A stretch of DNA of 64,000 bases. Source: Phallusia mammillata. Taxonomy: Eukaryota. How positions within the stretch are numbered: position 1 is the stretch's first letter; every line of letters starts with the position of its first letter. The stretch is taken from NCBI GenBank assembly GCA_965637545.1, contig OZ281497.1, positions 15,190,001 to 15,254,000 of the forward strand, given 5' to 3'. The notes under the pieces were generated by a model. That model was not told the DNA's origin. It saw nothing but the letters and a program-made list of their open reading frames with translations, and did not search any database. Both the position numbers and the translations under genes were made by a program. Positions 1 through 39,400 of this stretch are shown here, piece by piece.

Positions 1-648
1 GTCACGTACTGGGCTGTGTGCAGGCAATCCTAACGCAGGACTGAGGGGTATTGGTAGTACGACTGCCAACCCTAAAGTAACCGTCATATATTATCGAACA
101 TTTCTTTACCAGTAAATGAATATTGGTTACAAAATGAAGCACAAAAAACGTGTACCGTGATATAGACATCAAAAATACATGAATATTAAATGCCCATGTT
201 TAACCTATTTTGCTGCATCGTGGGACGATTGCATTGACGTTAGTATTTTTTTAAACGACAATGTACGTTTTTATCGACGTGACATTGCAAAACCAATAAT
301 TAAAACATGACACATGTAATTAAAGCAGAACGTAATATAAGAAGCAACAATCGCTACAGTCATAAACCAACAAGGGTAAAAAACAAAATACAATATTAAA
401 ATTATAAAAAAAAGTTTTTGTACATACTGCTCATTTTAGGAAATACTGTTGGAAATCATGTTGTATAACACTTAACTCGACGTCGAATATATATAACTTT
501 ATACACATTACGTTGCTAAAGTCGACAGTCATATGTAAATTAACTTTAAAACGATTGCAGTGAGTGGTACTATGAATATCAACTAGACATGCTGCTAAAC
601 GTATTTAAAACCCGGTTTGATAAACCGTTCTATGAAGTAAACTTGTGC

Positions 649-6725: not shown

Positions 6726-7097
6726 GACCGAAACCGAATGTTAGGCAGTTTTGTCGTATAAATTCGTCAGAATTCACCAAACCATTTATGACCTTTTGCG
6801 AAGTCTTGACAGGTAAACATAGGTTTTTCTACCAGGCATACAGCGGTGTTACACAATACAATAGTTGTGTTTCATTATTATTTTAATTTTGTGGGGTTTA
6901 GGGGTTCCTTGGCCATCATTGCCAGCCTACCAATGAATTTGTGTTAAGAGTGGGAAAAACGATAAAGTTTTGAAAAACATAATAGTTAGACGCGATTTTA
7001 GTTACGGCGTAGTTGAAAGATTGTTTGGTACCTTTTTAAGCAGAAAAGACACATTTTGCGCTTTAAATTTTCGTTCGTAAAAGATTCGGTTTCGGCC
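6726..7097. mobile_element. Degenerate MITE-like relic with short inverted repeats
   Basis: GACCGAAACCGAAT (6726-6739) versus ATTCGGTTTCGGCC (7084-7097), 13 of 14 inverted match. No TSD recognised. Confidence 0.4.
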
Positions 7098-7212
7098 AAA
7101 TCGCAACGAATTATTAAGCATTACTACATTAGACCGATCAACATGGAACTGCAGGTTTTTATGAGAGTTCACTTCGCCACACGCTTAAAGAATTGAACTG
7201 ATATGTTTATTA

Positions 7213-7749
7213 CAGTGGCTCCCAACCGCCGGTCCGCGTAAATATTTTGCCGGTCCGCCAATTATCTCACTTTATGCCAAGCTACTTTTTAAAATAGAAT
7301 GATAAGTAGGCCTATTGCTTAGTTGTTGGTGCATGCAAAAATTATTTTACGCATGACTGTAAAACTGGGGTAGCTCTCCATCGTTGATACCCGCAAATTG
7401 TTTAATAAGCTTTTGTGACGTTTATGATTGTTTTGTCATAAACTGTGCCTAGCATTCAACAATTTTTTGTAAAACGAAGTTATTCTTCGCTTTTGAGATA
7501 GCATTGATTTTGTATGTAAATGGATTTGCGTTTTGTTGTTTGAGTTGACTTGATTTCCGTTTGGTTGTTATTTTACGCCCTAAATACACAGGCTATGACT
7601 AAATTTTGCATTATGTTGCGCAGCGACAACTTTGGTGAACAAAAAGCTTACAAATATCTGTTGCATTCACTACGATCTTTCGTTGCCGGTCCGTGGATTT
7701 TTTGACATTTTCCCACAGTCCCACAGTGTAGAAAGGTTGGGAACCACTG
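7213..7749. mobile_element. Non-autonomous hAT-superfamily MITE, 537 bp
   Basis: Terminal inverted repeats CAGTGGCTCCCAACC / GGTTGGGAACCACTG (14 of 15 match). Perfect 8-bp target-site duplication GTTTATTA at 7205-7212 and 7750-7757. No coding capacity. 8-bp TSDs and CAG.. termini are typical of hAT elements. Confidence 0.9.
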
Positions 7750-9049
7750 GTTTATTAGAATTCTCTGGGACTGAACACAGATGATGTGGTTATTAAGCCT
7801 TTTAAATCTGCTCCTGATACATTACTGCATATTAAACAACGTGTGTTGCCGTCAATGTACTTTGCCAATTTAAACCCAATTCGTTCAACGTAAATTCAAA
7901 AACTACATTTACAGAACCACCAGGCGAACCGTTCAAAAGTTCAAAGCAATTAAATAATTCATCCCGGCAGTCATTATTAACCTTCGTCCTATGGTCGGCT
8001 GTTATGCTACTTTTCATCATCATTACGTTTCATTGACACTAAGCTATGACACTACTACTATGCACTGCACAAAAACTTTTTTCTATTAACTTTGTCTTTT
8101 AAACTCAAAAAAGTACAAAAAAGAAAAACTTAACCAAGCTCCGCCACTTAAAAACACTCTAATTTAACAAAAATATTTTGAGTTTTGGTAGCATTTTGAA
8201 ATTGCTCGAGATTGAAAAAAAGTAAATAACTAGCTTTACTTTCTGCCAAAGTTCTATAAAATAGCTTAGCATGATGTTTGTCGCACCTTACTGTTACCAA
8301 TACTGTCGTGGCGCCTGTCACAATAGAACCGTCACCGATAATAATAATCGCATGTGTGAACTCGCAGCAACTGCCTGAGTTCTCCATCTATAGCGCGCTA
8401 ACTAAAACTCCCCAGAGATCTTAGGCGACCCATCACCCTGATGCTGAATGAGTTGACTGATGGCAGTTTCCACATTTAATTTAAATTTAAACAAGTGCCT
8501 TAAATAACCTTCCACCATTCACAAGTTATTAAGTTTAAAGTCAGGTCAAGGCTGTTAAAAACTCGTGTAAATGGAAATTGAACTCAATACAAAGCATTTT
8601 TTTGAAAAAAGACGATTCTTAAACGCTTTACACGAAATACGGCAATAAAAAACAACGCCAGTACAAGGATAACACTGCGTCCTCAGTCATCGATATCATA
8701 ATGACGGTACGTCACAACAACAAAAATGGACGTCGCAAGTAATATGATGACAACACAAATTATGGTAGTGAAGAATTGTTTGCTGTTCTTTTATTGAATC
8801 GAGACTTTAATCGTTGGCATTTTTAAAGTCAACCAACTCAATTTACTTCAGGTTTGCACCTTCTCAGAGTTCATAGCTGAAACTGGGCGATAGTTTGCAC
8901 TGATTAAAGGGTAAAATGCTCATTTGCACAGATAACCGGAAAATCAATTCTAAAGCAATTGCGCCTCCGAGTGTGACAGGCAGTGATCTCAATCTCTTCG
9001 AGCAGAAACACTTTAAATGCACATTTAGTGCCAAGTCGGTTTCCCCACG

Positions 9050-11478
9050 TCAAAGATGCTTACTGTCAAAGATCCACAACTTTGACTTGGCAAGAAGTGA
9101 CGCTGCGACCTTCTCGTTTTTCTGTTTAAACGATGACGTGCGTGATGTCTGCATAACCAGAGACGAGGATCTCTTGCGTTGGCGCTCGGGTCTCGCCAGT
9201 TGCAGGACACTGTCTGAATAGTTTTGCAAGTCCGGGTCGATGTTTTGATTTAAATCAGCGAGTAGTGACTCAGTGTACCAGGCGTTCTCCTCTGATTCGT
9301 TCGACTTTCCAGACACGTGGCATTCAAGCATCGGGAGCAGCACGTCTGGCACTGGGTCTGGGACTTGTTTCTCGGGCTTCTGCTGAACTGGCATTTTGTT
9401 TGACTTATAGCGGATTGAGCTTACGCCACTCCTTTCCATGTTTGACATCGTATCAACAGAAAAGACCCGCCGCATCCGCCTGTCTGTCCTGTTGATTATA
9501 TAAATGCCCGTGGTGCCAGGTCTTGAACGGCGCGGGCAGTTCGACATCCAGTCGAACATTGTCCGGCAGGTGTCAGTGTAGAGCCATGGAAATAGCATGA
9601 CTCGCCAACGACGAAACGTCATGATTATGCAAATAAGGTTGATAATGAGATTGATGTCATACATGGCTAAAGGCGCAAAAGCCGCACTGGGAAAGCTGTT
9701 GTACACAGTTTTGACCAGGATAGCAATGGCGACGTCGGACAGAATACATAGTCCAGCTAATACAAACGACCTTCGTATGAGAGTAAGCAGACCAACGCTA
9801 CCGCTTCGCATGTGGTTTGATCTCACTGCTCGCAGCTTATTGTCCATGATCGGATACAAGAATAAGGCGAGGAAAGACATCTAAAAGACAGAAAAAAATG
9901 TTGAAGAACCTAAACCAAACTAAAATAAATGAAACGACATAGTTTTTTCACAGAGCCAATTTGTATGCGACAGACATCAAATGAAAACAACCCAATTTAC
10001 TTCTAAAATTTGTTATAATTACGTCGCGTTGCCCTTAAACCGATAAAATTTTAGGTGGGCTACAAAAACTCACTGAAGTTCCATATTTGATACTTGACGT
10101 TCTTTGCAATAACATTAAACGATACATACCTGAATGCCGCCTCCCAAAAGTCCCGCCAGCGTATTTACTATGACCCCTTGCCGTCGACGTCCTTCGCCAT
10201 CAGGGAACGTGTAGTTCTCTTGACCTGTGGTAGTTCGCATGTCTTCCAGTATTGTGTAGTGACAGACTCGACCACTTGCGCTGTTTTGTGGGTCCACTAC
10301 AAATATCACCATCGATACAATGGTCACTGCTATGAAGCACACAAGGGCCGCCCAGCTTAGAAATCGAACAGTTTTGCTGTACAGATGCTTCAATGCTCGA
10401 TTTGAGTAGAAGATGCGCTGTTAAAAAACATATCGAGATAAAATTAATTTGCTGTTGAGAACAAATCGAGATAAAAGGTAAATTACACATTGGTGAACTT
10501 ATGTTTGAATATGTTTCTTTGTGCTTAGTGTTTGAACAGATTTATAGATTTCAGAACGTTATTTAAATCGCATTATTTGCCATTAGAAATATGTTTTTGT
10601 AAAGGCAACTGGCTTTTCCAACACAATAGTTTTTAGTTATACGGTGTTAAATGTGTTTTTTTGTGAAAACCTCGTTTTTATGGTGGACATAACACATGTC
10701 GTATTATGTTTTCCTGGGGTTACTGACAAAATAAGCAGTTCAGTCACCAACGTGAATCATAAAAACAAATCTACATCTTACCTGGCGAACCCACAGGAAG
10801 AAGTACACAGGGTGTATTGTGACAAAGTACATCGCTATGCTAATGTTGATCAGGATGGAACACCTTGAACCCGATATCCAACCAGTGAAAAGCAGAGCTT
10901 GATTATTTGCAAATCGAACCAGGGCGAAGAGAATACCAATGATACAAAGGTTCTCCAACCAAATGCCTCCCTTCCGGTGACGATCTGTTGAACAAAATGT
11001 TTAGATGTTTGTTTTATTCAGGTATAAACTACGTCAAGCTCGCTGGAAGCTAATTACGTCCAGCTCATGTACGAGACGATTAATCTATTGCATTTGCATC
11101 TGGTCATTTTTAAGTATCTATAACCACTTCGGTAATTTTATCGTATCACATTAATGATGGAAATTTGCTTCAAGCTTCGTTTACCGCTTTAGTTGATATA
11201 AAGGTATTACCTGACAATTTTGGGTGTCTCATCTTAATTGCTCTATAATGGAGCAGCGCATAGAGCAAATAGAGAGCCATGATCACACAACTCAAATGAA
11301 TGACTTCACACGCGATCCAGGCCGTATTGCCGAAAGGGACCATCCTGGCGTCGTAATCCAAGCGACCAGAAGTCATTGCCATGGTCCTTTTGCGACTCAT
11401 TGTAGCTGCCATGGCGTCAGTCGCGTTATTGACAGCCAATGTCGGTTCCGTTGCAGAAATAATCTCGGCGCGCGTCAT
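9050..11478 (-). CDS. Orphan 7TM GPCR-like protein, paralogue 3; complement(join(9050..9880,10130..10417,10782..10984,11211..11478)), ~529 aa
   Basis: Four ORF fragments join with canonical GT/AG sites and consistent phases (1,0,0). Splicing rebuilds family motifs across the junctions: FFLWVRQ|RIFYSN and GGGIQ|MSFLALFLYP. The start ATG at 11478 is the first in-frame ATG; an upstream 5'UTR exon ending near 11907 is possible. Confidence 0.83.
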
Positions 11479-24400: not shown

Positions 24401-27400
24401 CTTCGTCTTATAAGCAGTGCGGATGTAAGTTGTTGATTATGATTAGTTAGAAAAAAAACTTTAAGAATGAGAACAATTGGTTTGAATTAAATGTTACGTT
24501 TTAGATTTTGTTTAGAAGTTTTTCTATGTTCCAATCGTATGATGTAAAACAGTTTCGTCTAATGTAGTTTTTGGTATTCAATGTTTCAAAATGTATACAG
24601 TTGTTGTTCCCTCTAATTTTTAGGGATCGTAGCGGTCATAACCATCAAACGATAAATAAATAGTAACATTCAGTTTTGTAACAAAACTCGTTTTTCAGCG
24701 TGGTAGTTTTGATAACAGTAAACCTAAAAGCGTTACTTTGTAAGTGCGATTTCATATGTTACCATTTTGCCAGTTCTGTGTGCTGCTGGTCAAGCATCAT
24801 GGACAGGCATTGGACCATGTTACCCATGTCCAGTCAACACTTATCAACACTTAATCGGACAGACATTTTGCTTCGAATGCCCTAATACTACTTTGACAGC
24901 CGATAAAGGATCCACTGATGTCAGCCAATGTATAGGTAAGCTTTAGTTTTTTTTTCTTGTATGCGACTTTGATCTACTGCTGTTTAGCCTATGTTTCAAT
25001 GTTGCCTATTTACAAGCCGATTGGAATTTATTCGCTTTATTGGTTTCTTAATTTGATTTTCTTTGCACGATAACAAAACATCTGCCTATCTAGGAAATCG
25101 CGCGTTGCTAAAAAATATACTTGGGACTTCAAAACAGTTACAGGGTTAAAACAGTCCTCCAAGACAGTCTGCATACAACTTTGCATATAACATGAAACAT
25201 TTTATTCAAGATGAACTTGTATTAGTGCAGTAACTGTTGATTGAACACTTCTCAAAAAAGCATCACATTGTGCCCAAATCAAACATCTCGATGTCAGTTG
25301 AAACGTCATCGGTGGATGACTCTGCAACATCAACATAAAGTCGCTTGAGGTCTGATGCGTTGAACACCAGTCTCCGCACATCGTCACTTGACTCCGTTGG
25401 ATGAACTAGAATCGACGGAACAATTCCCGAATGTCCACCTTTGTTTTCTTCCGGTGCTCGACCGGAATACATGCGCCGTAAGGCTTGATATGTGCTTTCG
25501 ACCGTAGGCGAGCTCATGCTTCCGTATTCAATAGAAGAAACGCTTTCGGAACCTTGACTGGATTGGGATACTGAACGTGATTTGTTCTCGTGTGGGGCCC
25601 CTTGTTTTGTCCACTTTTCGTGGGGTTCGTCTTTGGCTTCCGTGACAGTTTCAGTAGACCCGATAGAAGAACGCCTGCTCGACAGCTGAGCCTTTTTGGT
25701 GCTTTCGCGTGTCACCGAGTTCTCCCACTCAGAATCCGAGAGCGACAAATCAAGGCGCGAGATTGGGAAATGCTTTTCTAAAGCATCGCTGTCGTTGAAG
25801 CGGTTTACTGACTTGTATATGTAACCGTCTGATCCATTAAGAACGGAATTACCAAGGCGGTTTGCATCAACTCCGGGCAGCGCATGCAAAACCGACCGAT
25901 TAAAAACTGGCATTGACCGTCTGAAATCGTTTCTTGTGGCGGCTCTTAGTCTATCTACAGGTTGCCTGTAGTGCACCTCACTGTAGTCATATCCAGTATG
26001 GGATGGATCTTTCTGGAAGCGTGTGTCAATACTTGATTCGTCCGAATTTGATAGCGACTCGCAATTAGTGTCACGTGACGCGTGCATCGAGTCAACCGAA
26101 TCCAATCGACGGTGCAACGCTGATTTAAACTGCCTTTCGGCTCTCGACTTATTGTCCCTATTTTCGTCCCGAGCCTTGTCACCGGTCGCACAGAGCGCGA
26201 GGACCGTGTAATCTTCCGATGACTGGCATGCTTCCTCACGGAGATCGCTACTAGAAGTTGGAGTTTCGAATGCAGCTTCGACTGGCGGTGGGGGCAGATC
26301 GAGATCGTATGATGCTTCTGATAGCGACAGTGTGTCGACTTGACTTTCTTCGCTACATGTGTGGGCACAGGGAGGAGGCGGTGGAAACTCGAAATCGATG
26401 TCGTCCAAGTTTGGTGAATGTTGTCTCATGCTGACTGACCGTCCGACCCGATTTCCCCTATGTTCAACTTCCCTGCGCTCTGCATTGATTTCTGCCAACT
26501 GTGCCTTTCTAGAATTGTAGAAGTGTTCGACAGGTCGTTCTCCAGTTCGTCGCGCCGAAGCGCCTCTGCGCACCTTGCGTGGCGCCACTGATCCCAAAAC
26601 GCATGTGTCATCAAAGTTTCTGCCTTGAAAGATTTGGGACTTGGTCGCTTCCGGGGCTGTGCGTGATTTTTCTTTAAATATTGGTTTATTGTGATATTTC
26701 TGGTGTTTGCTGCGATGTTCTCCGTTTGACCGGGACGTTTCTATCTCTCGAAGAATTCCAAGAGCTTGATTCACGTCCCGATCACGCTTGGAGCGGCGCG
26801 ATGACCTGCCAAGTCGATTTGATGCGTGGCGACTGACGGGTGCTGACACACTTTCTTCATTCATTCGTCTCCGGTGATGGTAGCGAACCGGGGTGATTTC
26901 CTCATCTTGGAGTGCTCTCTCTCTGCGCTCATCAATTTGCAACGACCGTCTGTTGTTTATCCGCGGAGAGTAATCATGATGTGATGCATCAGTGCGAACG
27001 TCCATGAAACTTGATGCCCCCCTCACGTACAGAATCTGTCTTTGACGGTCTGATGAGACAAGGTCCATCATCGAACCACCTTGACGCGGCTGATCGCTGC
27101 ACGCGCTTTCGGGTGTTCCATTATTCCAGGACTTTTCAACTGGATCGCGAGGTGGCACAACTGGTGGTGGACAACTCGAACTGAGTCGGGATATAAAGCG
27201 ACCAGGAATAAGCGAGCGTTGACGCGGGGGTACGGACGGAGTTGCCTCACCGATGCCGAAAGATCCACCGCACGTCCATCTAATGTCAACACCTTTGTCT
27301 GCTGTCGAAGAAACGCTTGGACGGAGCTCTCTGCTCGTTGGAAGAGGTTGCCGAGGCAGTGGGCGACGAGCAAGCGGATTATCGTATAGTAGAGGATAGT

Positions 27401-30400
27401 TGCTGAAAGATCTGCGAGAGTGTTAAGTTGGGTTACTCAAACAAAGTGAAACTGTGCCTAGGGAAACTGCAGCCTTTAAAGTTTTGAAGATGTAAAATAT
27501 GTAACAGACTAGTATGTGTAACATTCTTTAAAGGGTTACACTATGAAGATGGTAAGGTTGTACCTTATAGACTCGGACGTACACTGACGTGTTTCTTCTT
27601 TGTCTGCACAGCATCTGTGTGAATAACAATTCGAATGTGGTTAACCAACATTTAACATTAATCACATAGGGATACTAAAACGTTTATCATCATGAAATGT
27701 GGATTATCACACGATCGAAACTTTTTCTTACCCGCATCGAGTTCCATCTGAGTTGAACTGCCGATTTAGTCCCACGGCTCCACAAACTACGATTGCGAAT
27801 ACACTAGCGAATATGGCCACAACCAGTAGCCAGGAGATCACCTCGTCCTGTGGTATCGGAGGCTCAAGTGATCCGTCGTTGTCTCGACTCGGAAAACCTG
27901 TTGCCAAAAACAAGGGGTTACCTAATGATTCTGAATGCAAAACTTCAACACGGGCGGCTGTACGTACCAGGTCGGGAGCGTTCTGTGCTGTTTTTGTCCG
28001 TCAGTCTGAACAACAAGAGGTTAAATATAGATTAGTCAGAGCAATTACCTGTGCAGTGCGATATTGCAAGTTTTTGCGTGCAAATGACCCACCCGATGCC
28101 AACCGTATTCGGCGGCAGTCGGACGTTGATCATGGCTGGCAAGCAGCGAATCGCAAGGTCGACAGCCGGAAGAAAAACTCACCTAAGGCCATCAGTCCCC
28201 TTTTCCAACTCGTTCTCTGCCAGTTCTGACTTGCCATTCTGATTGGACGTGGTGTTCACGTGGGTGGTGACGTATGGTCGCTTTGTCGAGTCGGCATCAG
28301 GAAATGAAGCAGTGTTGCGGCTCCACAATGCCGGCTGGAAAAGCAATTGGGCCTTACTGGATAAGCCCACCCTTGATGCCGGGGTCGTTTCGAGGTCAAT
28401 AAGAGCTTGTGTTGAAAACGTTGCCACCTGACTGGAATTCACTGTTGTTGTGATTGGCAGGGTATGATGTCCATTTATCTGATAAACCAACAAATATTTT
28501 TTGTAAAACTAACATATGCGTTAACGATCAAGGAAAGCGAAGACAAACTTGTCCCTGAACGAAAAAGCGCAAGGTGTGGAGCAAATTTTAGTTTCAGATG
28601 TCAAAAACATATTTTTATTTCTGTAGGTGTTTATCATTTTCAACCAGAATATTAATTATTACAAAATCGAAAATTCCTGTTTATACCGTTTTGGTTTTTA
28701 TTCTATTTTTCCACTTTTCGCGATGACCATGTTGCAAGTCGGGATAAAACGAATAGTTTGTGAAAGGCTCTAGTTCATCGACGTCAAGTTGCTCTATAGA
28801 AACACGTCGAAATCGGAGCGGATACCAACACCGAATCTGGTCGTGCGCCACCGCATTGTTGCCATGGTCACGACGCAAGCGATCTAATGCCCACTTGAGA
28901 TAACAATCGCACCTAAAATATAAGATTGTAACATGCAATTAGGTTAAATTCGTGAGTTCTAGAGACGTTTTTCGTGGACACGTTTTAATGGCTCTATTGA
29001 AAAGTCTGGAACCCGCACATTACTTAATCCTATTCCTTTGCGCAACGCTTATTCTGTGTGGAATTAAACGAAAGTTAAATCGTTTCAACTACTTATCGGT
29101 AACAAAAAAAAAATTGAACAGCAGCGTACATTCATTTCAGTGGGTGGTAATTGTTAGCAATTACAGTAATAAAACAAATATAACACACCTCCAACGGTTT
29201 TTATCCAATGAAACTGATTCGAGTTTGATTAGTGTTTTAAAACTGCTGTAGGTCAAGCGCGAAAGATCGTTGTTGGAAAGATTCACATATCGTAGTTCTT
29301 GCAAGGACATGAGACACCCTCGCCTTGGCGCCCTTTCGTTTGGATTGTTCCTTAGCTGCGTCAAACAAAGAACTTGCATTGCAACCGGTGAACACTAACA
29401 ATTTGTTTACAAATTTAATAGCAATGTTGGGTCAACAAGCGTTTCAGTCTACTTAGAAGTGCTTTTTGTCAGGACATTGAAAAGATAAATGGTAAAAGTT
29501 TAAGGAAGTTGTGAAGTAGAAAATCATGGTTTGTAAAGATAATATAAACTGTGTGTTGTATATTATGAATCACGAGTCACTAGAGACTCAGTCCGACAGA
29601 TAATTGTAACTTAAATGTTGTGTTAGACCAGGTACTTTAAATTGTGTATCACAGAATGGCCAAACATTCACAGACTATGTTCTTTGCAGCTGTCAAAAGT
29701 TGTTCATTCCTTATTAAGTCGGTAGTTAAATGCATAGAACAGTAAATCGATTCTAGAAAGTTACAAAGTTGCAGCTTATTGTCGTCGTACGTACTTCGAA
29801 ACAAGTGGCGTCGGGCGGGCGAATGTGAGTATCGAGGACGTCGATGTGGTTTCCTTGCAATTCCAGTCGACGTAACTTGCCCAAGCCTCGAGTGGTTGCG
29901 GAAGTAATTCGTTGAAGTCTGGAAACTTACAAGCTTAGTTCGGATGCAAATGCGGGAAGCGATACGATCGGAAATTGTCCACTATGCGTAATCCCTTGAA
30001 TTTGGCCAAACACATTTCACAAACATCAAACCAATTGCAAGAGTCGCTTCTATGGAATCAATGCTGTCATATGCATCAGCTCACATTAATTGTCAGTTAC
30101 ACTTTTAAGATTAAAATGTTGAATTCCACTTTACTTTATTTAATTTTATCTTCTGATAAACATACTGGCTATATGTAAAGCCCTAGAAGCACACTTTATT
30201 AGTGTAACGCTTTTGATAATTACTCATGCATTCATCGTCAGTGAATAATGGGGTTAGACATATATATGAGTTAATAGGGTAACTGAAAACGTACGAAATT
30301 TTATTTCTACAAAAAGGTATTTGAGACATTTACATTTGTAAGCCTAAAAATCACTTAAAATGTAAAAAAACTCCTTTACCTGTTGCTACTTAGATCAAGG

Positions 30401-33400
30401 TGTGTTAATTTGTTGAGTTGTCTGAATATTCCACCAGGAATATTCCGTAAATTGTTTTGCTTTAACTTGAGGATGCTAAGGCTGGTCAGTGAGGAAAATG
30501 TGGTCGCGTGCAAGTTGTAGATTTGGTTGTGGGATAAGTGCAGTTCGCTCAGACAAGTCAAACCGGCGAATGCATCAAAAGATATTGCTGCAATACACCG
30601 TGGTTTTAAATTACTTCAAAGTTTAAATGTTTGGATTAGGTTTCAGGCTTAAGTTTGCTTTTTACGTGTATGCGAAATTTGATGTATGACAAACGAAGCG
30701 AATTGCATAAGCATAAGAGAGAAACAGTAACTTATTGAAAAAAAAAATTTTTTTTATAGTTGTTTTAGCGTTGTTTGTGCTTTCATGACTTAATACCGAT
30801 AAAGTCATTTCGTTTACAGTCAAACACTTTAAATAATTTGCGTTTTGTTTGCTTGCATGATGTTTTAAATAGAATAGATTGATAAAGGGTTGTTTTCTAT
30901 TAATCAACAAAAAATTTACTCACTCTTGATTAAGTTGTGGGTCAAGTTGAGGAAAGTAAGTTGTTTGAGTGAAGCGAACACTCGGTCAGAAATAATCGTT
31001 AATTTGTTGCCTCCAAGGTCAAGATACTGGAGTCTTTGCACAAAGTGGAATGTGTCCAATGAAACCGAGTCGATCCTGTTATCCTGAAGTTGTATCGAGA
31101 TCAGTTGACTGTTGTTTGCCAAAGCATCAGCTGGAATCTAACAATAAAAATGCATTTAATACCATTTTTACACTTTTTTTGTGACCCAGTCAGTTGAAAA
31201 TAAAACGTTAATTACGCGAAAAACTTTGTTTACATCATGCAAACCTCAATATTCTTTTAATGTAATGTTAGTTTACTCCCGGTCAAAACGAGCTATGGGA
31301 AGCAAAGCTGCGACAGCAACGCACACCTTGATGGATTACATTATATTTTTAACACACGTGATTCAACTAAGAACGAATAATCTTGTATTTATGACAGCTT
31401 TTACCTTTTGTATGTTGTTTCCATTGAGAAGGAGGACAAGCGTTGTTTGTGGAAGGGGCAATGGGAACTGATCTACTGACTTGCAATGTACTGTGCTGCT
31501 GCTACAGATACATGATGCTGGACAAGACTCTCCCGTCAGTATAAACTGTAGAAGGGATAACAGGACTATCTTCAACATTGTAATGTCCAGTATGTTTCCT
31601 TGTGTCTTCCGTGTCAATGTACTGATCAAAGACTCTCAGTTTCAGCCATTTCCAGTTCGCAAATTATCACGTCCGCACTGCTGTTGAGGGAACTTGACCG
31701 CCAGTAATCTGTCATAATCTAAAATATCAAGCCAAGAGCAAGACTGACGTTTCTTGCCGCCCAGGCCTTTTTCAGTGTAATGTCGTTTCCGCCCGAACGC
31801 CAGGACTTAGTCTGTCGAGGGCGGTGATTACTTCCGCTTGAAGCCGCTCCTGCGCTCGGCTGTGAGAAACAAAAACCGCGCAGCTTTGCGCAACGTGGGA
31901 AAGTGCCGGGGCAATTGCATGCCCGCCCGTTTGTAATGTTAATAACTCCGCGCGTGGAGCAATACAAGAAAGGCCGGTGTAGTTTTGTTGTGCTTGGTGG
32001 TTTGACGCGGCAAAGAATGGTGGTCGATTTCCTTTTTGCGATGCAACTTGCGACTTGGCGTCATTCAGAAAAGGCCGACGCGATGTTGACATTTACGTAA
32101 CAGATGATTGCGCCATGTCGCTCGAAGTTCAAGCGTCTGCGCTTGTTGATTCAGGAACGTTCAAATAATTTTTGTGGTTTCATTTCCATATCTAAACTTA
32201 TCGCGACATTTCTACATAAGACACATAGACTTGCACATTTTGCTCATCTATGAATATCAAAAACATATTACATAACCATTATTACCAATTTGTTGTAATC
32301 GCAGGTTCCGGTGCAATATTAGACGATGTTCTTTCGCTTGAACGGCTCAGACCCTTCAGCAGTTGCTTTATGGGTCAGTAATGCATTGTCCTTATCTAAA
32401 GCTTCTTTTTTAATACTTCAACTTTACTTTCCATCTTTAGATCCGTGTCAGAATGCAGCCACCTGTGAACCAAGCTCGGCTGGTTACATTTGTTTGTGTC
32501 TGCCGGGTTTTGACGGTAAGCCATTTGCACTTTATTTGTCATGTACATTTAAGGCTTGTTTCGTTTGATATTTTCCAGGAGTCGATTGCGAGATCAATGT
32601 GAACGAATGTGGAAGCGATCCTTGCCAAAACGGAGGCACTTGCAATGACATGATTAACGGATACAAGTAATCTCAAACATTTAAAATCTCATACAATTTT
32701 GTAAATTTGTGTAAATAAATTTACTTTAAATGTGACGTAGCTTGTATGTTTGGCATAAAATGGAGAGATTTACTTGTTGCCATAGTAACTGTGATTTACT
32801 TCTCGTTTCAGCTGTTCTTGTGTTGAGGGATACGAAGGTGACAATTGTGAAACCGAAACGAATGAATGCGAATCCGATCCTTGCCTAAACGGAGCTACTT
32901 GCGTAGATCAACTTGCCTTGTATTCTTGTTTGTGCGCGCCTGGATTCACAGGTAACAACCAACAATTTCCAAAAGCTAGACATGGTGAAAACGTTTGTTT
33001 GTGCTTGGGTCAGTGTCACATTATTATTTTCAATGCAACCTGGCATACTGAGATGACACAAAACCGTTTAATGTAAACAGTTTGCAAACTTTTGCATTAT
33101 GTGCCGCCAATGGACACAAAAATGATTATTGACACAACATCGGCATCCAAATTTAAATGACAAACAAAATTCTAGGAAAAATGAATGGAAGATATTGATC
33201 ATATTTGATTTAAAATACATTTTTATGTTTTAGTTCTTAGTGCATTATTTAGTTGTACGTTATACCTATTGTAGAAAAAATATTTTTTCCGCTTAATAAC
33301 CAGCAACATGCTTGCGTAGAAAAAAAAACGAATTTAAGTCATTCTTTTGATTATTGTTGTAGTAGGCGAAATGCTTGACGGCACCTGCAAAATGCTAACA

Positions 33401-36400
33401 ATTTGAGTCCCAAGCAAATTGTAAACTTAAAACATGCAAGTTATTACCATTTTAGGAATCCACTGCGAGGTCAACATTGACGATTGTACTCCAATGCCTT
33501 GTGAGAATGCGATACAGTGTGTGGACGGCGTGGATACTTTTACATGTGAATGTGAATCGGGCTTCACTGGAGTCGTGTGTGATATTGACATAGATGAATG
33601 TGCGTCAGATCCATGTATTAATGGTGGAACGTGCAGCGATCGAGTAAACGGTTTCACGTAAGTTCGTGTTTATGAATATTGTACAAAATATCACAACAGT
33701 TACCTCAATGAATTTAGATGAGGTGTGAGAATGGTTTGTTCGTTAAGATTAATTTTCCTTTGTTAAAACTATCATTGTTCGTCGTTAACCCCATTCTCGT
33801 ATACTTGTGCTCAACCAAGTAACGTTTTACTTTGTTCCCGAAGATCTCTTCTGTTGTCTTTCCATTACATTGTTTTTGGTTATTTTAACACTAAGTAATT
33901 TTAACTCTATGGTAACGACAGAGTAATATTTTAACACCATCAATGAATCTGTTCATAAATGTAAAATGTAACATGTTTTGTTCTCAAGCGTTTCAGCGAA
34001 TGTTCATCCGATTGCCAGTAATATATGTCACTCCTGGTTTGAAAGCAAATCGCTTTTTGCGCCTATTTTGCCTATTATTTTTTATGGCTGTAAGGCTATA
34101 AGTTTTGTAGTAATAAATTCTCCAAATATTTGTTTTTCCAAGATGTGAGTGTCCGATTGGTTTTACGGGAGAGTTGTGTCAGATCAACATCGATGACTGT
34201 GTCGGACAAACTTGTAACAATGGTGGCTCTTGCGTTGATTTGGTAAATGGATACCGTTGCTTCTGCGCCCCTACATTTGCTGGAACTCATTGCGATGATG
34301 GTGTGTTCTTCTTGTTTCCAATGCCATGTAAAAAAAAACATGAAACAAAAGTTAGGAAAAAAAACATTTTTACAGGTTGACAAAACGTGACCGTTTGGTC
34401 TAGTTTGATTTTTTTTTAAAAACATTACATTTTTCACCCTTTACCAGAATACAACTAAACCTTAGGTATGACTGTGGAATACATAAAACATTATTCTTTT
34501 TAACAGAGGTTGAACCGGATTTCGATTTGCACTTTAACAAACCACACGTGTATCACCACGTCCACTTTAAGGAGGGCTTCCGAAACATGACCGAAATCAC
34601 CGTTTCATTTTTTATGTTTTCAAATAACACTGAAAGTGAAGGGACCCCTTTCTCGTACGGTGTCGGCAAAGGTCGACTTGCTGATGCTTTTACTCTGACC
34701 AACATTGAAGCTCTAACCTTGTAAGTTTCTCTGCGATGTTCATAAAATGTGCAAGGGTATTCCTGCAAGCTTGATTTAGCTGCATCTACACAGGAGAATG
34801 GTGTCTACAAATTAATGTATTTTTAAACAGACTGCACCCCACAAAATTCCCAACGACGACGAATTTGAAGCCAATTTATTTAAACTTGTGTTAATGTTGT
34901 ATCAGTTAAAGCACATGCTTTTTACAAATGTGTGTGTACATGTAAATGTTAAAAGGGCTGCACGAAGATGGATTTTCAAGTGCTAGCTTCTTTCAAGTCG
35001 AAAAATGTACACACGTTATTTGTAGACCTGAATATCAGACAATAAGTTTTGACTTGCCATCCATGCACATCTGTGCCAATAGCTTGAAGTTGCAGTTAAA
35101 TTTAATGCGATTTTAACATTCAGATATGTGAATGGTGAAGCTGTCGTGACAGACGTGCAAAAACTGAACGACGGTCAGTGGTATCACGTGGTTGTCACGT
35201 GGAAAAGCGAGGATGGATCGTGGAACATCTTCATCAACAGAGTGAAGACGGCGAGCGGAATTGGTTTGCAAACTGGGACAGTGATTCCTGGAGGAGGGAT
35301 TATGGTGATCGGACAAGAACAGGATTGTCTGGGAGGTTGCTTCTCATCATCACAAGAGTTTCTCGGTAACGCTTTTTAGGATTTTGATTTTGACGTTTTA
35401 CACTAGAGGTGCACAGCACGGGGGCCGTGGACTAAATTTGGACGTCAATTTGTTGACAAATGACTCGCGAAAAGTTTGTTTAGTTACTACTACGTCCTAA
35501 AAAATAAATGTTCTAAAAACACCGTTAATAACGTGGTGTTTCTTTTGTTACACCGTACTGAGTTCGTTCACGATTTTGGAACAATTAATAACTGTTTGGG
35601 TAATTAAAGGATATCATTTTGCTGACAACACTTAATTTACAAAAAACGTGGTTCTAATGTGACTTGAGTATTATTAGTAATCACATTTAAAGGTCTTTTG
35701 ACAACAAGTTTTGTGTTTATACGACGGTTTTACACAGTAACCTAATAAACAAACTATGTAAGATTATTCCAACAATTTTAGAAATTGTTTAAAAAAACTC
35801 ATATTTTTTTGCAGGCATCATCTCTCAGTTCAACGTTTACGATTACAGATTGACGGATCAGCAAGTAACCAGCCTTTACCTTAATTGTGTAAGAAACAAA
35901 GGAAATGTACGAGCTTGGCCCGACGCACTAGGTGGCATTGTTGGGCAGCTTGATATCGTTAGACCACCTTCGTTTTGCCAACCGTGTCCTGATATTCCAT
36001 CAGTCAACAACATGAAAGTCAGGAAACCAGTAAGTAAACAAAATTTCTTACAATAACAGAGGCACTTGTTGAAACAGGTGGTGTTTTAAATACTTACACA
36101 AAATTATATTGTTTTTGCAACATTGTACATTGTAACCACGGGGCCTGCTGTAAAGTAAGTGTTTTGCTAAAACCTAGTTTAATTGTAATGCCTTTTGATT
36201 TAATGTTTGCTTTAAGCTGACTATAAGTCCGCCGTCGTGCTGGCTTTTTAAATTTTAGTCCATTACAATTCTCTGCACCATCGCGCCAATCACTCGGTTA
36301 TCTAAATTATCTTATTGTATCGTTCAGCATTATGTATCAAGCTAAACTGTGTTTTAGTTTACGTTTTACGTATTCATTAGTACAAAGTAATGAAAACATC

Positions 36401-39400
36401 CTTTTTTGATACAAGTCAACAACACTCACCAATAACTTCGACATTTTAACCGATTTATGCTTGAAACAGGAGACGTACGTGAGTTACTTGCAATGTGATG
36501 TCGGTCACAATATGTACATGAGAGTGGGGATCGGAAGCCGACGAGTGCGAAACGGTTTAGTTGTTCGTTGTGGCAACGCGGGCAAATGGAAATATAAAGG
36601 AGTTGACCGTGAAAACCCGTCAAGGTTATTTTACTGCTCCCGCAAAAGCTGCAGACCATACACTGCCGTAAGTCTTGCGCTCACCAGTCCATCACATATT
36701 TGTCTAAAACTCCTAACTCTTCCCATGTGGCAATGCATATGTGTCTTAGCATGTAAAACGTCAAAAAAACGAAAGCTTAGTTTCACGTATAAAAGTTAAA
36801 TTTCACATTCTCTCGATAACATGAATATTTCTTTCAGCTAGTTACCTAGGATTGCGCATAATTTTATCAAAACAACAGTTTCAGTAAAGTAACCATCAGT
36901 GACAGGACATTTTAACAAGTTTTTTCCATCTCTGTTTTTTACATGCAACAACTATTGCATGCACTTGCAAATATATGTTTGAAAATGCCAAGAACTTTAC
37001 CGCGTAGATAAAACAATTGAAACATCATTCTCGCTTTTTAGCCCCTTCGTGGCAGTGTTGAAGCTACCGGTCGTCTTTACGAGGACACAGCAACATTTTC
37101 GTGCAATGAGGGTTATAAGATCGAAGGACTACAAGAAATATCTTGCCTCGCCAACCAGGTAATGGCTTGATTTCGTCTTTATGTTGCCTTTGCTATATGT
37201 TTGACTGTTATTTTCAGAAATGGTCGGGGCCTACTCCAAGTTGCGTTGATGTGAACGAGTGTGCGACGAGTCCCTGCCACAACATGGCTACATGTGTTAA
37301 CTCTGATGGAAGTTTCACTTGCACCTGTGATTATGGATATACGGGTATGAATATAGTGCGCCAAATACCCGAACTTTCTTGTCGATATCATAAATGTGCA
37401 TACATAGTTTTGCAAGATATATAGGTAATTAAGGGGCAATTGTTTTAAGTCATAGGCTACGTTTTCATTATCCCCATGCAAATAAACGGATTATGCAATT
37501 AAGCGGTATGTAATAAAATAAACTTTGTCTGTAGTTACGTTTTTCAAGTTTGTTATGCCAGCGCAAAAACAGTTAGTCTTTATGATAGTTATCCTGACCT
37601 GCGACCATTTTTGTAGATCAAAATTGAGAGCTCATTTGTGTGTTTAGTGTTAAAACAATCACTGTGATTGTTGCAGGCGATGGTTTTAATTGCATCAATA
37701 TCGATTGTGGCCGACCGAGTGCTCCTGTTAACGGAGAGGTCACTGTCGAAACGTTTTTCCTCGATGACGTCGTCTCATACCAATGTCACGTTGGTTACGA
37801 ACTCCATGGTCCAATCGAAAGAGCCTGTCAAGAAAATGGTGGTTACTTCACTCTATTAGTTGTGCACAAACCATACACAGCTGTTCGTACCAAACAAATC
37901 ATCAATATAGTTTTTGTTGACAGAAACAAATAATAAGAAATTTGTTGCCCATTATTATGTGATAGTTTGTGGTATAAAATTTCGTTTGTTCGTTAAGCAT
38001 TGGTACAGAATTGGTAAGTTGCCTTGACGGTATAGTGAGACCAGATAATAAAATGTGGACATTGTAATCTCTTATCATTCTTCTAACAGTGGTCAATTAT
38101 AACACTGGGCAACAAAAAAATATTTTTTTACTGGTGTCTGGAATGTTTTAACTGATTTTGACTAATTCTAGTGCTCTGATTTCAAAAATGCAATCAGTTT
38201 ATCTGTATCACGTCTAGTTTTCCTGTTATGGTACATCCACATTTGAAAAACAATCTATATGTATACATAAAAGTAAAACTGGTTTTGAGTATTTTATTTG
38301 GAATTAACGTTATTGCAAGAACAAAATTTCGAATTTAATTTTAAATGTAACAGGTGGACACTCCTAACAAACAAAATTCAAAACAAAAAAATGTTTCAAA
38401 TTTGTAAGTTATCAGGTATACCCCTACACATGTACTTTGGTAACTTTCGGAACTGAGTGGCAGCAATATCGTCCCGTTTAATTGACCAACAGCAGTTAGC
38501 CAGGACCACATTATTCCTTCTTCCCTGACACATTTTGTTTTACTGATATCCTGTTGGAACCTTTCAGCTTAATTCTGATCATTTATATCCCCTACGTTTT
38601 AAGGGAAGTGTAGCTTTATACTGATTTTCGTACCGAATTTTTCAGACCGCTTAATAACTTAGTTATGTACTCTTTCTAATAATTTCAGTCCCTTTCTGCT
38701 GTTTTTGTCCATTACTGCAATATTCCAGTCAACATTAGGTAAGTGTAGCCATTTGCTTGTCCTAAACCCCTAAGGCCACATCGAAGTGTGCAAGATATGC
38801 ACATTTGATACAGACCTTTTTTTCTTTTTAGTTGTGTTGTATGGGTTTACACCAGAAATGTAGCATAAAACATCTTGGTAATTCATACAACACCTTATAG
38901 ATGACCTAGCCACTATTAACTTTAGTTTTACCACCTTGCTTTACTAGCCTGAAAATCACTCCATAAAACATGTATAGTTTAAAGTTGCCGTTAGCCTGCA
39001 CCAACCATTTTTAGACAGAGCATAAGCATAGAACGCATATTCATGCTATAAAACTGACTGCACTGTAGGAAATTGATATGTATAATGTAACAAAACTTTA
39101 ACAAACACATAAAAGCATGAGTTTAAAGTCATTGAATCAATATGGTCATAAATTTTGATTTTGTAAATAACTTAAAAAGTTGATCTGATTGAAGAAAACC
39201 GTAATGATTTTTGAAATCAGCACCCCAAAATTAGTCAATATCAGTGTTAACATTAAAGACACCAAAAATTGTGTTGGCTTGATTATATAATCAAATTGTT
39301 ATAATGGTTTCCCCAATTTGTGACTGTAATATGTTGTTGAACAAGGATTTATAATTGTATAATGTTTCGGGTAGGCAAGTGCAAGCTAGTAACTTTCGGT

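What the first reader, a model, noticed from the sequence alone, without database searches (positions are those of the whole stretch)
24936..32304. Complete 12-exon LRR receptor-like gene nested antisense in the intron between the SVEP1 GCC repeats and EGF array
Seen: scattered ORF fragments assemble with consistent splice phases into signal peptide, LRRNT, ~10 LRRs, LRRCT, stalk, TM and a long tail, filling most of a 7,369-bp host intron. The 631-aa ORF at 25263 is only the end of the last exon, which extends in frame to an acceptor at 27411. Established: vertebrate LRRTM genes are nested antisense in alpha-catenin introns. I know of no described LRR-TM gene nested in SVEP1. Inference: a matrix protein and a candidate cell-surface receptor are held in one locus. 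Two modelled introns are only 43 and 47 nt.
Basis: partly seen in the sequence, partly recalled or inferred. Interest (0 to 1): 0.7.

Follow-up and report, generated by a model that had tools for sequence, protein, structure and literature searches.

The report
LRR receptor gene nested in SVEP1
A real, transcribed gene for a cell-surface leucine-rich-repeat receptor with a very long flexible tail lies backwards inside one intron of a sea squirt's SVEP1-like matrix gene, and six other tunicate-type loci (Clavelina, five unnamed contigs) keep it in that same intron, yet databases call the protein only 'uncharacterized'.

Summary
On the minus strand of 25263-31745 lies one gene: signal peptide, LRRNT, nine full LRRs plus a tenth merging into LRRCT, Ser/Thr stalk, one TM helix and a ~770-aa cytoplasmic part, mostly a 715-aa last exon. 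cDNA contigs confirm three splice joints exactly and carry a template-switch oligo that marks a 5' end at ~31745, inside the host intron. The tail exon finds full-length proteins of Ciona intestinalis (LOC100176386) and Clavelina lepadiformis (LOC143460540) with the same LRR-TM-tail layout. The LRR exons and the large 3' exon are therefore very probably one gene, though no RNA joins them here. Eleven of the twelve modelled exons match the Clavelina gene in order and in all ten intron phases. The twelfth, E8 (28135-28049), lies between the 47- and 43-nt introns and has no support. In Clavelina and in five anonymous contigs from other genomes, the gene sits antisense in the same intron of an SVEP1-like gene, between the third GCC2/GCC3 exon and the EGF array. 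The tail has no Pfam domain and relatives were found only in these genomes. It keeps short motif islands, including an invariant RPLPxxP box and, in four lineages, FPPPP. This is a new member of a known kind, and any functional link to the host is untested.

The parts
31579..31745 (-). 5' UTR. The cDNA 5' end is at about 31745. It holds a 29-codon uORF (31715-31626).
   Evidence: RNA contig 31504-31745 of run X2 ends in 20 loose letters. Their reverse complement is the 3' end of the Smart-seq template-switch oligo (oligo as given in bioRxiv 10.1101/2022.01.12.476004). uORF.
31405..31578 (-). E1: ATG, signal peptide, LRRNT (Cx3CxCx6C), start of LRR1. Ends in phase 0.
   Evidence: The joint 31405|31137 is in an RNA contig. 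Aligns to Clavelina residues 11-64 and Ciona 8-64.
30924..31137 (-). E2: LRR1-4. Ends in phase 1.
   Evidence: Pfam LRR_8 E 1.6e-16. Both borders are confirmed by RNA joints.
30380..30587 (-). E3: LRR4-7. Ends in phase 2.
   Evidence: Pfam LRR_8 E 1.5e-18. The acceptor is confirmed by the RNA joint 30924|30587. The donor is inferred, and its position and phase equal those of Clavelina.
29795..29918 (-). E4: LRR7-8 and the first Cys of an inserted loop. 41 codons, ends in phase 0.
   Evidence: The donor is confirmed by the RNA joint 29795|29355, whose short side is only 25 nt. Clavelina exon 4 is also exactly 41 codons.
29189..29355 (-). E5: rest of the Cys-bounded loop, LRR9, start of LRR10/LRRCT. 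Ends in phase 2.
   Evidence: RNA joint. Aligns to Clavelina 262-303 and Ciona 277-332.
28687..28912 (-). E6: LRRCT (CxC...C, three Cys) and start of the stalk. Ends in phase 0.
   Evidence: Matches an LRRCT exon in L001/L006 (E 3e-9). Borders are inferred.
28183..28478 (-). E7: Ser/Thr-rich stalk with NxS/T sites. Ends in phase 2 at AG|GTGAGT.
   Evidence: Only a weak match to the Ciona stalk (E 7e-5). Borders are inferred.
28049..28135 (-). E8: doubtful 29-codon exon (phase 2 to phase 2) between a 47-nt and a 43-nt intron. It can be skipped in frame.
   Evidence: Open in frame with AG/GT borders. No RNA contig lay on it and no homologue was found in six other loci or in the Ciona protein. 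Clavelina has no such exon. The 47-nt 'intron' has GC 0.55 against 0.29-0.37 for the longer introns.
27968..28005 (-). E9: 38-nt micro-exon with an N-glycosylation site. Changes phase from 2 to 1.
   Evidence: Needed to keep the frame. Same rank and phases as Clavelina's 51-nt exon 8. No significant sequence match.
27732..27897 (-). E10: juxtamembrane stalk, TM helix, basic stop-transfer. Ends in phase 2.
   Evidence: KD mean 2.94. 53-60% identical to the TM exon in L001 and Clavelina (E 8e-17 and 1e-19).
27564..27614 (-). E11: 51-nt exon, CC...RQ..SESI. With the preceding C-G it makes a C-G-C-C cluster. Ends in phase 2.
   Evidence: Aligns to Clavelina 598-614 and Ciona 606-621. Same phase as Clavelina exon 10.
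25263..27411 (-). E12: 715-codon cytoplasmic tail plus stop codon (25265-25263).
   Evidence: Open frame. 36-40% identical to P0001 over 97% of its length. Profile hits the tails of the Clavelina and Ciona proteins (E 3e-76 and 1e-64). RNA contigs lie at 25800-25965 and 26206-26443.
25027..25206 (-). 3' UTR region with three AATAAA/ATTAAA signals, whose first bases are at 25206, 25041 and 25032.
   Evidence: The 3' end itself was not observed.
24788..24935 (+). Host exon: third GCC2/GCC3 (Ephrin_rec_like) repeat. Donor GT at 24936.
   Evidence: Pfam PF07699 E 2.6e-14. Donor. Orthologous exon lies beside the nested gene's 3' end in L001 and L004-L010.
32305..32375 (+). Host micro-exon after the intron (peptide ends ..RPFSSCFMG).
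   Evidence: AG at 32303-32304. Weak matches lie on the host strand just upstream of the first EGF exon in L004, L008, L009 and L010 (E 0.004-0.33 within each locus; the L010 one is not that locus's best hit).
32441..32520 (+). Host exon: first EGF domain of the array. The end coordinate is approximate.
   Evidence: Pfam EGF E 2.8e-8. Acceptor.

Best explanation
This is one single-copy, transcribed protein-coding gene with 11 coding exons, possibly a 12th cassette. It has its own transcription start inside a 7.37-kb intron of an SVEP1-like gene, on the opposite strand.

It encodes a type I membrane protein of the extracellular-LRR kind. The parts in order are: signal peptide, LRRNT, nine LRRs plus a tenth capped by a three-Cys LRRCT, a Cys-bounded loop inserted in LRR8, a glycosylated Ser/Thr stalk, one TM helix and a C-G-C-C cluster. 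About 770 cytoplasmic residues follow.

The tail's composition suggests that it is disordered. It is the orthologue of the 'uncharacterized' proteins Ciona intestinalis LOC100176386 and Clavelina lepadiformis LOC143460540. The nesting is old: the same intron holds the gene in Clavelina and in five unnamed contigs.

Inferred, not shown: the LRR arc binds an unknown extracellular partner. The tail works as a docking scaffold through short linear motifs kept against a fast-changing background. These motifs are:
- an invariant juxtamembrane box Y-P-L-[LV][14 protein letters not shown], which fits the class I SH3 ligand pattern +xxPxxP and a pYxN site;
- FPPPP and LPPPP, which are Ena/VASP EVH1-type ligands, in four of seven lineages;
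- Ser/acidic clusters;
- a conserved acidic C-terminus.

The most likely role is therefore cell-surface recognition or adhesion coupled to adaptors and the actin machinery.
For: Gene model:
- All borders are GT..AG with consistent phases.
- Three joints and a template-switch-marked 5' end are in cDNA contigs, and contigs also lie on the last exon (oligo).
- It is single copy in the 240-Mb genome.

One gene, not two:
- The profile of the tail hits 1,419-aa and 1,341-aa proteins at residues 616-1417 and 623-1103.
- Their N-terminal halves carry LRRNT and LRR_8 and align colinearly with E1-E6, E10 and E11.
- Those proteins are annotated Clavelina and Ciona gene products.
- Clavelina's ten intron phases, 0,1,2,0,2,0,2,1,2,2, equal those of this model without E8.
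- Tail homology begins at the first residue after the acceptor.

Nesting:
- The Clavelina gene lies inside the opposite-strand 6,508-aa VWA/Sushi/HYR/Ephrin_rec_like/EGF gene.
- GCC exons flank its 3' end and EGF exons its 5' end.
- The same order holds in L008, L009 and L010. In L001 and L006/L007 the 3' half of the gene and the GCC exons are seen.
- Tails are only 20-40% identical between lineages.

Motifs.

Host domains.
Against: - No RNA covers the joints E3|E4 or E5 through E12. The link between LRR exons and tail in this genome rests on orthology, phase and colinearity.
- The orthologues are computed gene models, although RefSeq models usually use RNA data.
- E8 is unresolved.
- The runs are only guessed to be RNA by the tool. 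Their cDNA nature is my inference from the GT..AG joints and the oligo.
- The function is wholly inferred. No ligand, no expression site and no tested motif is known.
- FPPPP is absent from three of the seven tails.
Confidence: 0.85

Rival explanations
1. The full 12-exon model is right. E8 (28135-28049) is a real exon, constitutive or cassette, removed from its neighbours by 47- and 43-nt introns, and adds 29 stalk residues.
For: E8 is open in the needed frame with a CAG acceptor and a CAG|GTAATT donor, and its length keeps the frame. Its GC of 0.54 is exon-like. Without it, the E7-E9 intron would have GC 0.49, unlike the other introns at 0.29-0.37. E7 + 47 nt + E8 add up to 430 nt, close to Clavelina's single 393-nt stalk exon.
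Against: No RNA contig covers it. No homologue was found in any of six other loci or in the Ciona protein. Clavelina has one exon fewer, with phases matching the model without E8. The 47-nt intron is GC-rich (0.55) and far shorter than every confirmed intron here (267-439 nt). An 87-nt GC-rich stretch is open in a given frame by chance about one time in four (my estimate).
Confidence: 0.35
2. There are two genes: an LRR ectodomain or LRR-TM gene ending near 27564-27732, and a separate gene for the 631-719-aa ORF.
For: Prokaryote-style gene callers report the tail ORF alone in the metagenome contigs.
Against: Annotated Ciona and Clavelina proteins join both parts. The conserved tail box starts at the acceptor, upstream of the first Met of the ORF. 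E10 and E11 end in phase 2 and E12 completes the codon. The exon order is kept in six other loci.
Confidence: 0.04
3. It is the tunicate member of the LRRTM family, so that its nesting echoes the LRRTM/alpha-catenin nesting by descent.
For: Protein-language-model look-alikes of the Ciona ectodomain plus TM are led by LRRTM2 and LRRTM4 clusters (score 0.96). Both have about ten LRRs with caps and one TM. LRRTM is among the PDB sequence hits (E 3e-29).
Against: LRRC15, LRIG1, IGFALS and TLR3 score better by sequence. The cytoplasmic part is ~770 aa and ends ..DLGTM, not a short tail with a PDZ ligand. The host gene is SVEP1-like, not alpha-catenin. Uvarov et al. found no lrrtm in Ciona or amphioxus, and their best Ciona hits were Slit2 and vasorin-like, not this protein (PMC3933685).
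Confidence: 0.04
4. It is a decaying pseudogene or an assembly artefact.
For: E4-E5 encode an irregular LRR, the LRRCT has only three Cys, and an in-frame TGA follows E7.
Against: The irregular loop and the three-Cys cap are shared with Ciona and Clavelina. The TGA sits in a GTGAGT donor. The 1,270-codon reading frame is intact and spliced cDNA exists. The motif islands have been kept over deep divergence. A colinear 17.4-kb DNA contig and synteny in six other loci argue against a mis-join.
Confidence: 0.02

Closest known systems
Ciona intestinalis LOC100176386 (XP_002122405.3, XP_026690529.1, XP_026690530.1) and Clavelina lepadiformis LOC143460540 (XP_076814213.1 / CAK8675858.1), 'uncharacterized protein'
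   Same: Same architecture from signal peptide to the C-terminal ..[12 protein letters not shown]-type end. Colinear exon-by-exon alignment. The Clavelina gene has the same ten intron phases and lies in the same host intron.
   Different: Only 31-35% identity in the tail and 31-60% in the other matching exons. Stalk lengths differ. Ciona isoforms X1 and X2 carry a 29-aa insert after the first exon that this gene's confirmed E1|E2 joint lacks. Nesting in Ciona could not be checked.
Vertebrate LRRTM1-3 nested in CTNNA2/1/3 introns (PMC3933685)
   Same: A type I LRR membrane protein with about ten LRRs, encoded antisense inside a large conserved intron of a bigger gene, with the nesting conserved over long evolutionary time.
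   Different: The host is different (SVEP1-like). The gene has many exons and a ~770-aa cytoplasmic part instead of a short tail. There is no sequence-specific affinity, and no lrrtm has been reported in tunicates.
FLRT2/FLRT3 and LRRC4B/C (NGL) ectodomains
   Same: The Ciona orthologue aligns in one stretch from LRRNT to LRRCT (residues 24-345) with the FLRT2/3 LRR domains and (63-347) with LRRC4B/C. This means the same repeat number and caps.
   Different: There is no FN3 domain (FLRT) or Ig domain (NGL) between the LRRs and the TM helix, since Pfam finds only LRR families. The tail is unrelated.
LRRC15, LRIG1, IGFALS (best PDB sequence hits)
   Same: Highest-scoring typical-type LRR runs (E 5e-48 to 6e-43).
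   Different: The scores come from several overlapping repeat matches. These proteins have 15 or more LRRs or added Ig domains, and no comparable tail.
Roundabout (Robo) CC2 motif and other FPPPP/LPPPP receptors that recruit Ena/VASP (established knowledge, from memory)
   Same: A guidance or adhesion-type receptor tail that is long and, by composition, probably disordered. It carries conserved proline motifs of the EVH1-ligand type (FPPPP at tail residue 342, LPPPP at 372).
   Different: No sequence relation. The motifs are present in only four of seven lineages. Binding is untested.

Membership tests
Extracellular-LRR (eLRR) type I membrane proteins | N-terminal signal peptide | tested here: met
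   E1 begins [14 protein letters not shown], with KD mean 1.56 over 19 residues, followed by the LRRNT cysteines. No dedicated predictor was run.
Extracellular-LRR (eLRR) type I membrane proteins | Tandem typical LRRs flanked by Cys-rich caps (LRRNT, LRRCT) | tested here: met
   LRR_8 is above the Pfam cut-off in E2 and E3 and matches in 4 stretches in both orthologues. The Cx3CxCx6C cap is in E1. LRRNT is below cut-off (window E 0.65, Ciona 3.5e-4). LRRCT is seen as W-R-C-D-C...C with three Cys, and is not detected by Pfam.
Extracellular-LRR (eLRR) type I membrane proteins | Single TM helix after the ectodomain | tested here: met
   Only one segment has KD above 2 (E10, 2.94). The tail maximum is 0.59. 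The TM exon is 53-60% identical in L001 and Clavelina.
Tunicate orphan LRR-TM family (Ciona LOC100176386 group) | Tail with the juxtamembrane box Y-P-L-[LV][11 protein letters not shown], the R-W-T-x-G-G box and the acidic C-terminal S-T-D-I-E-M box | tested here: met
   The first two boxes are present in all seven lineages aligned. The C-terminal box is present in six of seven. Profile E-values to Clavelina and Ciona are 3e-76 and 1e-64.
Tunicate orphan LRR-TM family (Ciona LOC100176386 group) | Position antisense in the GCC3|EGF1 intron of the SVEP1-like gene | tested here: met
   Seen in the window, L004, L008, L009 and L010, and on the GCC side in L001 and L005-L007. Ciona was not testable.
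LRRTM | Short cytoplasmic tail ending in a PDZ-binding E-C-E-V (feature recalled from memory) | tested here: not met
   The cytoplasmic part is ~770 aa and ends D-L-G-T-M.
LRRTM | Orthology by reciprocal best hit, or presence in tunicates | tested here: not met
   PMC3933685 reports no lrrtm in Ciona. Its Table S4 best Ciona hits are Slit2 and vasorin-like, not XP_002122405. PDB hits rank LRRTM behind LRRC15, LRIG1, IGFALS and TLR3. I did not build a tree.
FLRT | FN3 domain between the LRR domain and the TM helix | tested here: not met
   No fn3 hit in the window's stalk exons or in either full-length orthologue.
Slitrk | Two separate LRR domains, each with its own caps | tested here: not met
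   One LRRNT, one LRR run and one LRRCT.
Toll/TLR | Cytoplasmic TIR domain | tested here: not met
   No Pfam family in the tail at E up to 1 except a chance-level TMEM171 hit. None in the orthologues.
SVEP1 (host gene) | Combination of Sushi, VWA, EGF and pentraxin domains, with GCC2/GCC3 and HYR | tested here: inconclusive
   The window holds Ephrin_rec_like, Sushi, EGF and Pentaxin exons on the + strand. VWA and HYR are not in the window, but they are listed for the Clavelina host protein. Orthology to vertebrate SVEP1 as such was not tested, and Ciona has several Svep1-like genes (PMC12816324).

The most novel reading that the evidence does not exclude
The nesting is kept because the two genes are functionally tied. 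Either the LRR receptor binds the SVEP1-like matrix protein encoded around it, making a ligand-receptor pair in one locus, or antisense transcription through the host intron forces reciprocal or coordinated expression of the two. That would explain why the pair has stayed in the same intron while the receptor's tail has diverged to 20-40% identity.
Probability: 0.1. Interest if true: 0.7.

Novelty: new member of a known kind. Interest (0 to 1): 0.4.

Why it matters
- **An orphan receptor gets a checked structure.** The gene now has a verified exon structure, its own start site and a family signature.
- **The nesting looks old.** Seven lineages, this one included, keep the gene in the same intron although their tails are only 20-40% identical. 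They appear to be distantly related tunicates.
- **A testable question follows.** Conserved nested pairs are rare enough to be useful test cases for transcriptional interference versus shared regulation, and Ciona is an experimentally tractable system.
- **The tail gives concrete hypotheses.** Its conserved short motifs (the RPLPxxP box, FPPPP/LPPPP, the acidic C-terminus) suggest how an LRR adhesion receptor might reach adaptors and actin regulators.
- **It corrects gene calls.** The 631-728-aa 'ORF proteins' in metagenome collections are the last exon of this gene. The Ciona X1/X2 insert may be a retained-intron artefact.
- **It is not unexpected in kind.** eLRR receptors and nested genes are both common. 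Other reports of this scan, which I did not check, list further conserved nested pairs in this same genome.

Tried and rejected
- **Extra micro-exon or short intron between E4 and E5.** I considered alternative frames at 29790-29650 and an acceptor at 29394. The RNA joint 29795|29355 and the Clavelina exon borders ruled this out.
- **Host intron ending at 32440 instead of 32304.** Rejected, because the micro-exon 32305-32375 is conserved in four other genomes.
- **E8 as a frameshifted continuation of E7, or an assembly indel.** Frame 0 has stops at 28194-28192 and 28185-28183. The DNA contigs show no indel.
- **Word search with the tail.** It found only an ORF-level protein. The full-length orthologues needed the whole-library HMMER run.
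- **First tblastn of exons against L001.** E6, E8 and E11 were in the wrong frames. It was redone.
- **Looking up the Ciona protein's locus.** Not on record.
- **Literature searches.** Searches for the locus tag, for SVEP1 with nested or LRR, for SVEP1 with Ciona, and for nested genes in Ciona found no description of this pair.
- **Findings search by five words.** Blank.
- **Joined spliced protein.** All searches were made exon by exon by reference, or with database proteins.

Full report
**What is in the sequence**

The window has no N runs. I rebuilt the model base by base:

| Exon | Coordinates (minus strand) |
|---|---|
| E1 | 31578-31405 |
| E2 | 31137-30924 |
| E3 | 30587-30380 |
| E4 | 29918-29795 |
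| E5 | 29355-29189 |
| E6 | 28912-28687 |
| E7 | 28478-28183 |
| E8 | 28135-28049 |
| E9 | 28005-27968 |
| E10 | 27897-27732 |
| E11 | 27614-27564 |
| E12 | 27411-25263 |

Every border is GT..AG. The phases at the exon ends are 0,1,2,0,2,0,2,(2),1,2,2. The CDS is 1,299 codons, or 1,270 without E8.

Pfam gives LRR_8 well above cut-off in E2 and E3, weaker LRR hits in E4 and E5, a sub-threshold LRRNT in E1, and nothing in the stalk, TM or tail exons. By eye the ectodomain has these parts:
- a Cx3CxCx6C cap;
- nine 24-residue LRRs, with LRR8 interrupted by a Cys-bounded loop that spans the E4|E5 joint;
- a tenth LRR running into a W-R-C-D-C...C cap.

There is one strongly hydrophobic segment, in E10 (Kyte-Doolittle mean 2.94), and none in the tail. 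The tail is 67% disorder-promoting residues.

**RNA evidence**

Only one search for runs and one laying of reads were allowed. Three small runs of the same organism, guessed by the tool to be RNA, gave contigs with three joints: 31405|31137, 30924|30587 and 29795|29355.

All three have CT..AC ends on the + strand, which is GT..AG on the minus strand. All three fall exactly on my E1|E2, E2|E3 and E4|E5 borders. The third has only 25 nt on its short side, but it coincides with the exon border of the Clavelina orthologue.

A further contig covers 31504-31745 and then runs into 20 letters that do not match the genome. Their reverse complement is the 3' end of the Smart-seq template-switch oligo, which marks RNA 5' ends (the oligo is quoted in bioRxiv 10.1101/2022.01.12.476004). 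I draw two conclusions:
- the runs are cDNA;
- the gene has its own 5' end at about 31745, 167 nt upstream of the ATG and 560 nt inside the host intron.

Contigs also lie on the last exon, at 25800-25965 and 26206-26443. No contig covered E3|E4 or any joint from E5 to E12. A 17.4-kb DNA contig is colinear with the whole stretch, but it may be the assembly's own data.

**One gene or two**

The tail exon alone (window:25266-27410:-) found by word search only a 728-aa ORF-level protein, P0001, from metagenome contigs. It is 36% identical over 97% of the query. Their alignment shows islands of identity in a variable background.

A profile of the two, run against 1.84 billion representatives, found six proteins. 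Two are full-length:
- P0002, 1,419 aa, tail matched at residues 616-1417;
- P0003, 1,341 aa, tail matched from residue 623.

They are Clavelina lepadiformis CAK8675858.1 / XP_076814213.1 (LOC143460540) and Ciona intestinalis XP_002122405.3 (LOC100176386, three isoforms). All are named 'uncharacterized'. Both carry LRR_8 in their first 350 residues, and the Ciona protein also a sub-threshold LRRNT.

Exon by exon, E1-E6, E10, E11 and E12 align to them in order. E7 aligns weakly to the Ciona stalk. E8 and E9 give no significant match.

I mapped the Clavelina protein back on its genome (L004). That gives 11 coding exons whose borders fall at the same aligned residues, and exon 4 is 41 codons in both species. 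Its ten intron phases are 0,1,2,0,2,0,2,1,2,2, identical to this model without E8.

In every relative the tail homology starts at the first residue after the acceptor, with the box S-x-S/T[16 protein letters not shown]. That is upstream of the first Met of the ORF.

I therefore take the LRR exons and the large 3' exon as one gene (0.85). The two-gene reading keeps about 0.04.

**The doubtful exon**

For it:
- it is open, in phase and well bordered;
- it is GC-rich like an exon;
- without it, the E7-E9 intron would be unusually GC-rich (0.49 against 0.29-0.37).

Against it:
- no RNA contig lay on it;
- no homologue was found in six other loci or in the Ciona protein;
- Clavelina has one exon fewer there;
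- the 47-nt 'intron' itself has GC 0.55;
- every confirmed intron of this gene is 267-439 nt.

I give it 0.35. E9, a 38-nt micro-exon, is needed for the frame. It corresponds in rank and phase to Clavelina's 51-nt exon 8.

**The host and the nesting**

On the + strand the window holds these exons:
- Ephrin_rec_like (GCC2/GCC3) at 15900, 24018, 24223 and 24728;
- Sushi at 16574, 18039, 37628 and 43845, with further Cys-rich exons onward that were not scanned;
- EGF at 32323-37421;
- Pentaxin at 35083-35376.

This is an SVEP1-like architecture. I first suspected that the true acceptor was at 32440, but the 71-nt micro-exon 32305-32375 has weak matches (E 0.004-0.33 within each locus) at the same place in four other genomes.

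The nested gene runs from about 31745 to a polyA signal at 25206 or 25041/25032. It therefore fills roughly 6.5-6.7 kb of the 7,369-bp intron without touching host exons.

In Clavelina the public annotation places the orthologue wholly inside an opposite-strand gene for a 6,508-aa protein with VWA, Sushi, HYR, Ephrin_rec_like and EGF domains. The three GCC exons lie just past its 3' end and the EGF exons just before its 5' end.

The other contigs show the same:
- The contigs carrying P0001 (L001, L006, L007) show E4, E5, E6, E10 and E12 in order, followed by the GCC exons on the other strand.
- The three weak profile hits P0004, P0005 and P0006 are the tail exons of three further genomes. There the LRR exons, the tail, the GCC exons and the EGF exons stand in the same order and orientation.

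Pairwise tail identity among the seven lineages is 20-40%, so the arrangement is old. The named relatives are ascidians. The five anonymous contigs could not be assigned to species, and nesting in Ciona could not be checked. The gene is single copy in this 240-Mb genome.

**What it probably does**

Shown: a type I eLRR membrane protein with a very long cytoplasmic part that has no known domain.

Across seven lineages the tail keeps short islands:
- the juxtamembrane box above, which contains R-P-L-P-x-x-P (the class I SH3-ligand pattern +xxPxxP), Y-x-x-hydrophobic and Y-D-N;
- R-W-T-x-G-G-x-F-G-x-G;
- P-P-x-x-P-P-R;
- Y-S-x-L-x-x-C-S-S-G;
- R-K-D-S-x-D-S-M-F;
- Ser-rich S-V-S-S-I-E;
- Y-Q-x-L-x-x-M-Y-S-G;
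- the C-terminal Y-F-D-V[20 protein letters not shown].

Four lineages also keep [11 protein letters not shown], and three of those a nearby L-P-P-P-P. These are the classical EVH1-ligand forms used by Ena/VASP partners (established knowledge, recalled from memory). The C-G-C-C cluster after the TM helix is a plausible palmitoylation site.

Inferred: the protein is a recognition or adhesion receptor whose tail, probably disordered, recruits SH3/SH2 adaptors and actin regulators. None of this is tested.

**Comparison with known families**

By sequence against PDB chains, the Ciona orthologue is closest to LRRC15, LRIG1, IGFALS and TLR3. These are multi-stretch repeat matches. It aligns cap-to-cap in a single stretch with the ten-LRR domains of FLRT2/3 and with LRRC4B/C.

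A protein-language-model search puts LRRTM2 and LRRTM4 clusters first. I treat that as a lead only. The membership tests fail for each named family:

| Family | Why it does not fit |
|---|---|
| LRRTM | No short tail. Uvarov et al. found no tunicate lrrtm, and this protein was not their best Ciona hit. |
| FLRT | No FN3 domain. |
| Slitrk | Only one LRR domain. |
| TLR | No TIR domain. |

The honest filing is a tunicate orphan eLRR-TM family. The LRRTM/alpha-catenin case is an analogy of gene arrangement, not of descent.

**Novelty and score**

The gene and its nesting are visible, unnamed, in public annotation of two ascidians. I found no paper that describes either.

Notes from other agents of this scan say that this genome is Phallusia mammillata or a close relative. 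They also say that several other antisense nested pairs in it are conserved among tunicates, for example LRRC4-like in SND1 and GPR22-like in COG5. I did not test these notes. If they are right, conserved nesting is a recurrent trait of these genomes, which lowers the surprise.

I rate this a new member of a known kind, with interest 0.4. The most novel reading not excluded is functional coupling of receptor and host, as a ligand-receptor pair or by antisense regulation. I give that 0.1.

**Limits**

- The joined spliced protein was deliberately not assembled or submitted to any search tool. All searches used single exons by reference or database proteins.

Noticed in passing
window 29542-29603 (intron 4 of the nested gene): Several unrelated DNA contigs of run X4 and one contig of X6 match only this ~60-nt stretch at 90-95% and then diverge, and depth rises from 274 to 1,174. 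It is probably a multicopy element.
   Followed up: no
window 31715-31626, minus strand: A 29-codon upstream ORF in the 167-nt 5' UTR, ending 48 nt before the main ATG. An A>G difference at 31592 appears in the cDNA contig.
   Followed up: no
window 32305-32375, plus strand: Host micro-exon between the GCC and EGF parts. Its ending motif R-P-F-[ST]-[ED]-C-F-[KM]-G is kept in L004 and L008 and more loosely in L009 and L010. It has no domain assignment.
   Followed up: partly
window 29830-29290, minus strand (E4|E5); P0002 residues 236-265; P0003 residues 263-295: LRR8 carries a 20-27-residue insertion bounded by two conserved Cys (I-x-P-P-D-x-x-C ... C), and an intron splits it at the same place. 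The LRRCT has three Cys instead of four in all three species.
   Followed up: partly
P0010 / P0003 residues 67-95 (Ciona isoforms X1, X2): A 29-aa insert that is absent from isoform X3 and from this gene's RNA-confirmed E1|E2 joint. It may be a retained-intron artefact in the Ciona models.
   Followed up: partly
L005 (ENA ERZ27241799 contig), 1-9900: It has the same tail ORF and GCC exons as L006/L007, but no match to E4-E10 in the 10 kb upstream. This could be a haplotype with an insertion or a chimeric metagenome contig.
   Followed up: no
window 34404-36053, plus strand: Pentaxin domain of the host. The middle ORF (35083-35376) hits PF00354. Two flanking ORFs look pentraxin-like by eye but gave no Pfam hit.
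   Followed up: partly
window 28182-28049, minus strand: This GC-rich (0.54-0.55) stretch downstream of the E7 donor is open in two frames. It may be a remnant of a once longer stalk exon, since E7 + 47 nt + E8 = 430 nt against 393 nt for Clavelina's stalk exon.
   Followed up: partly
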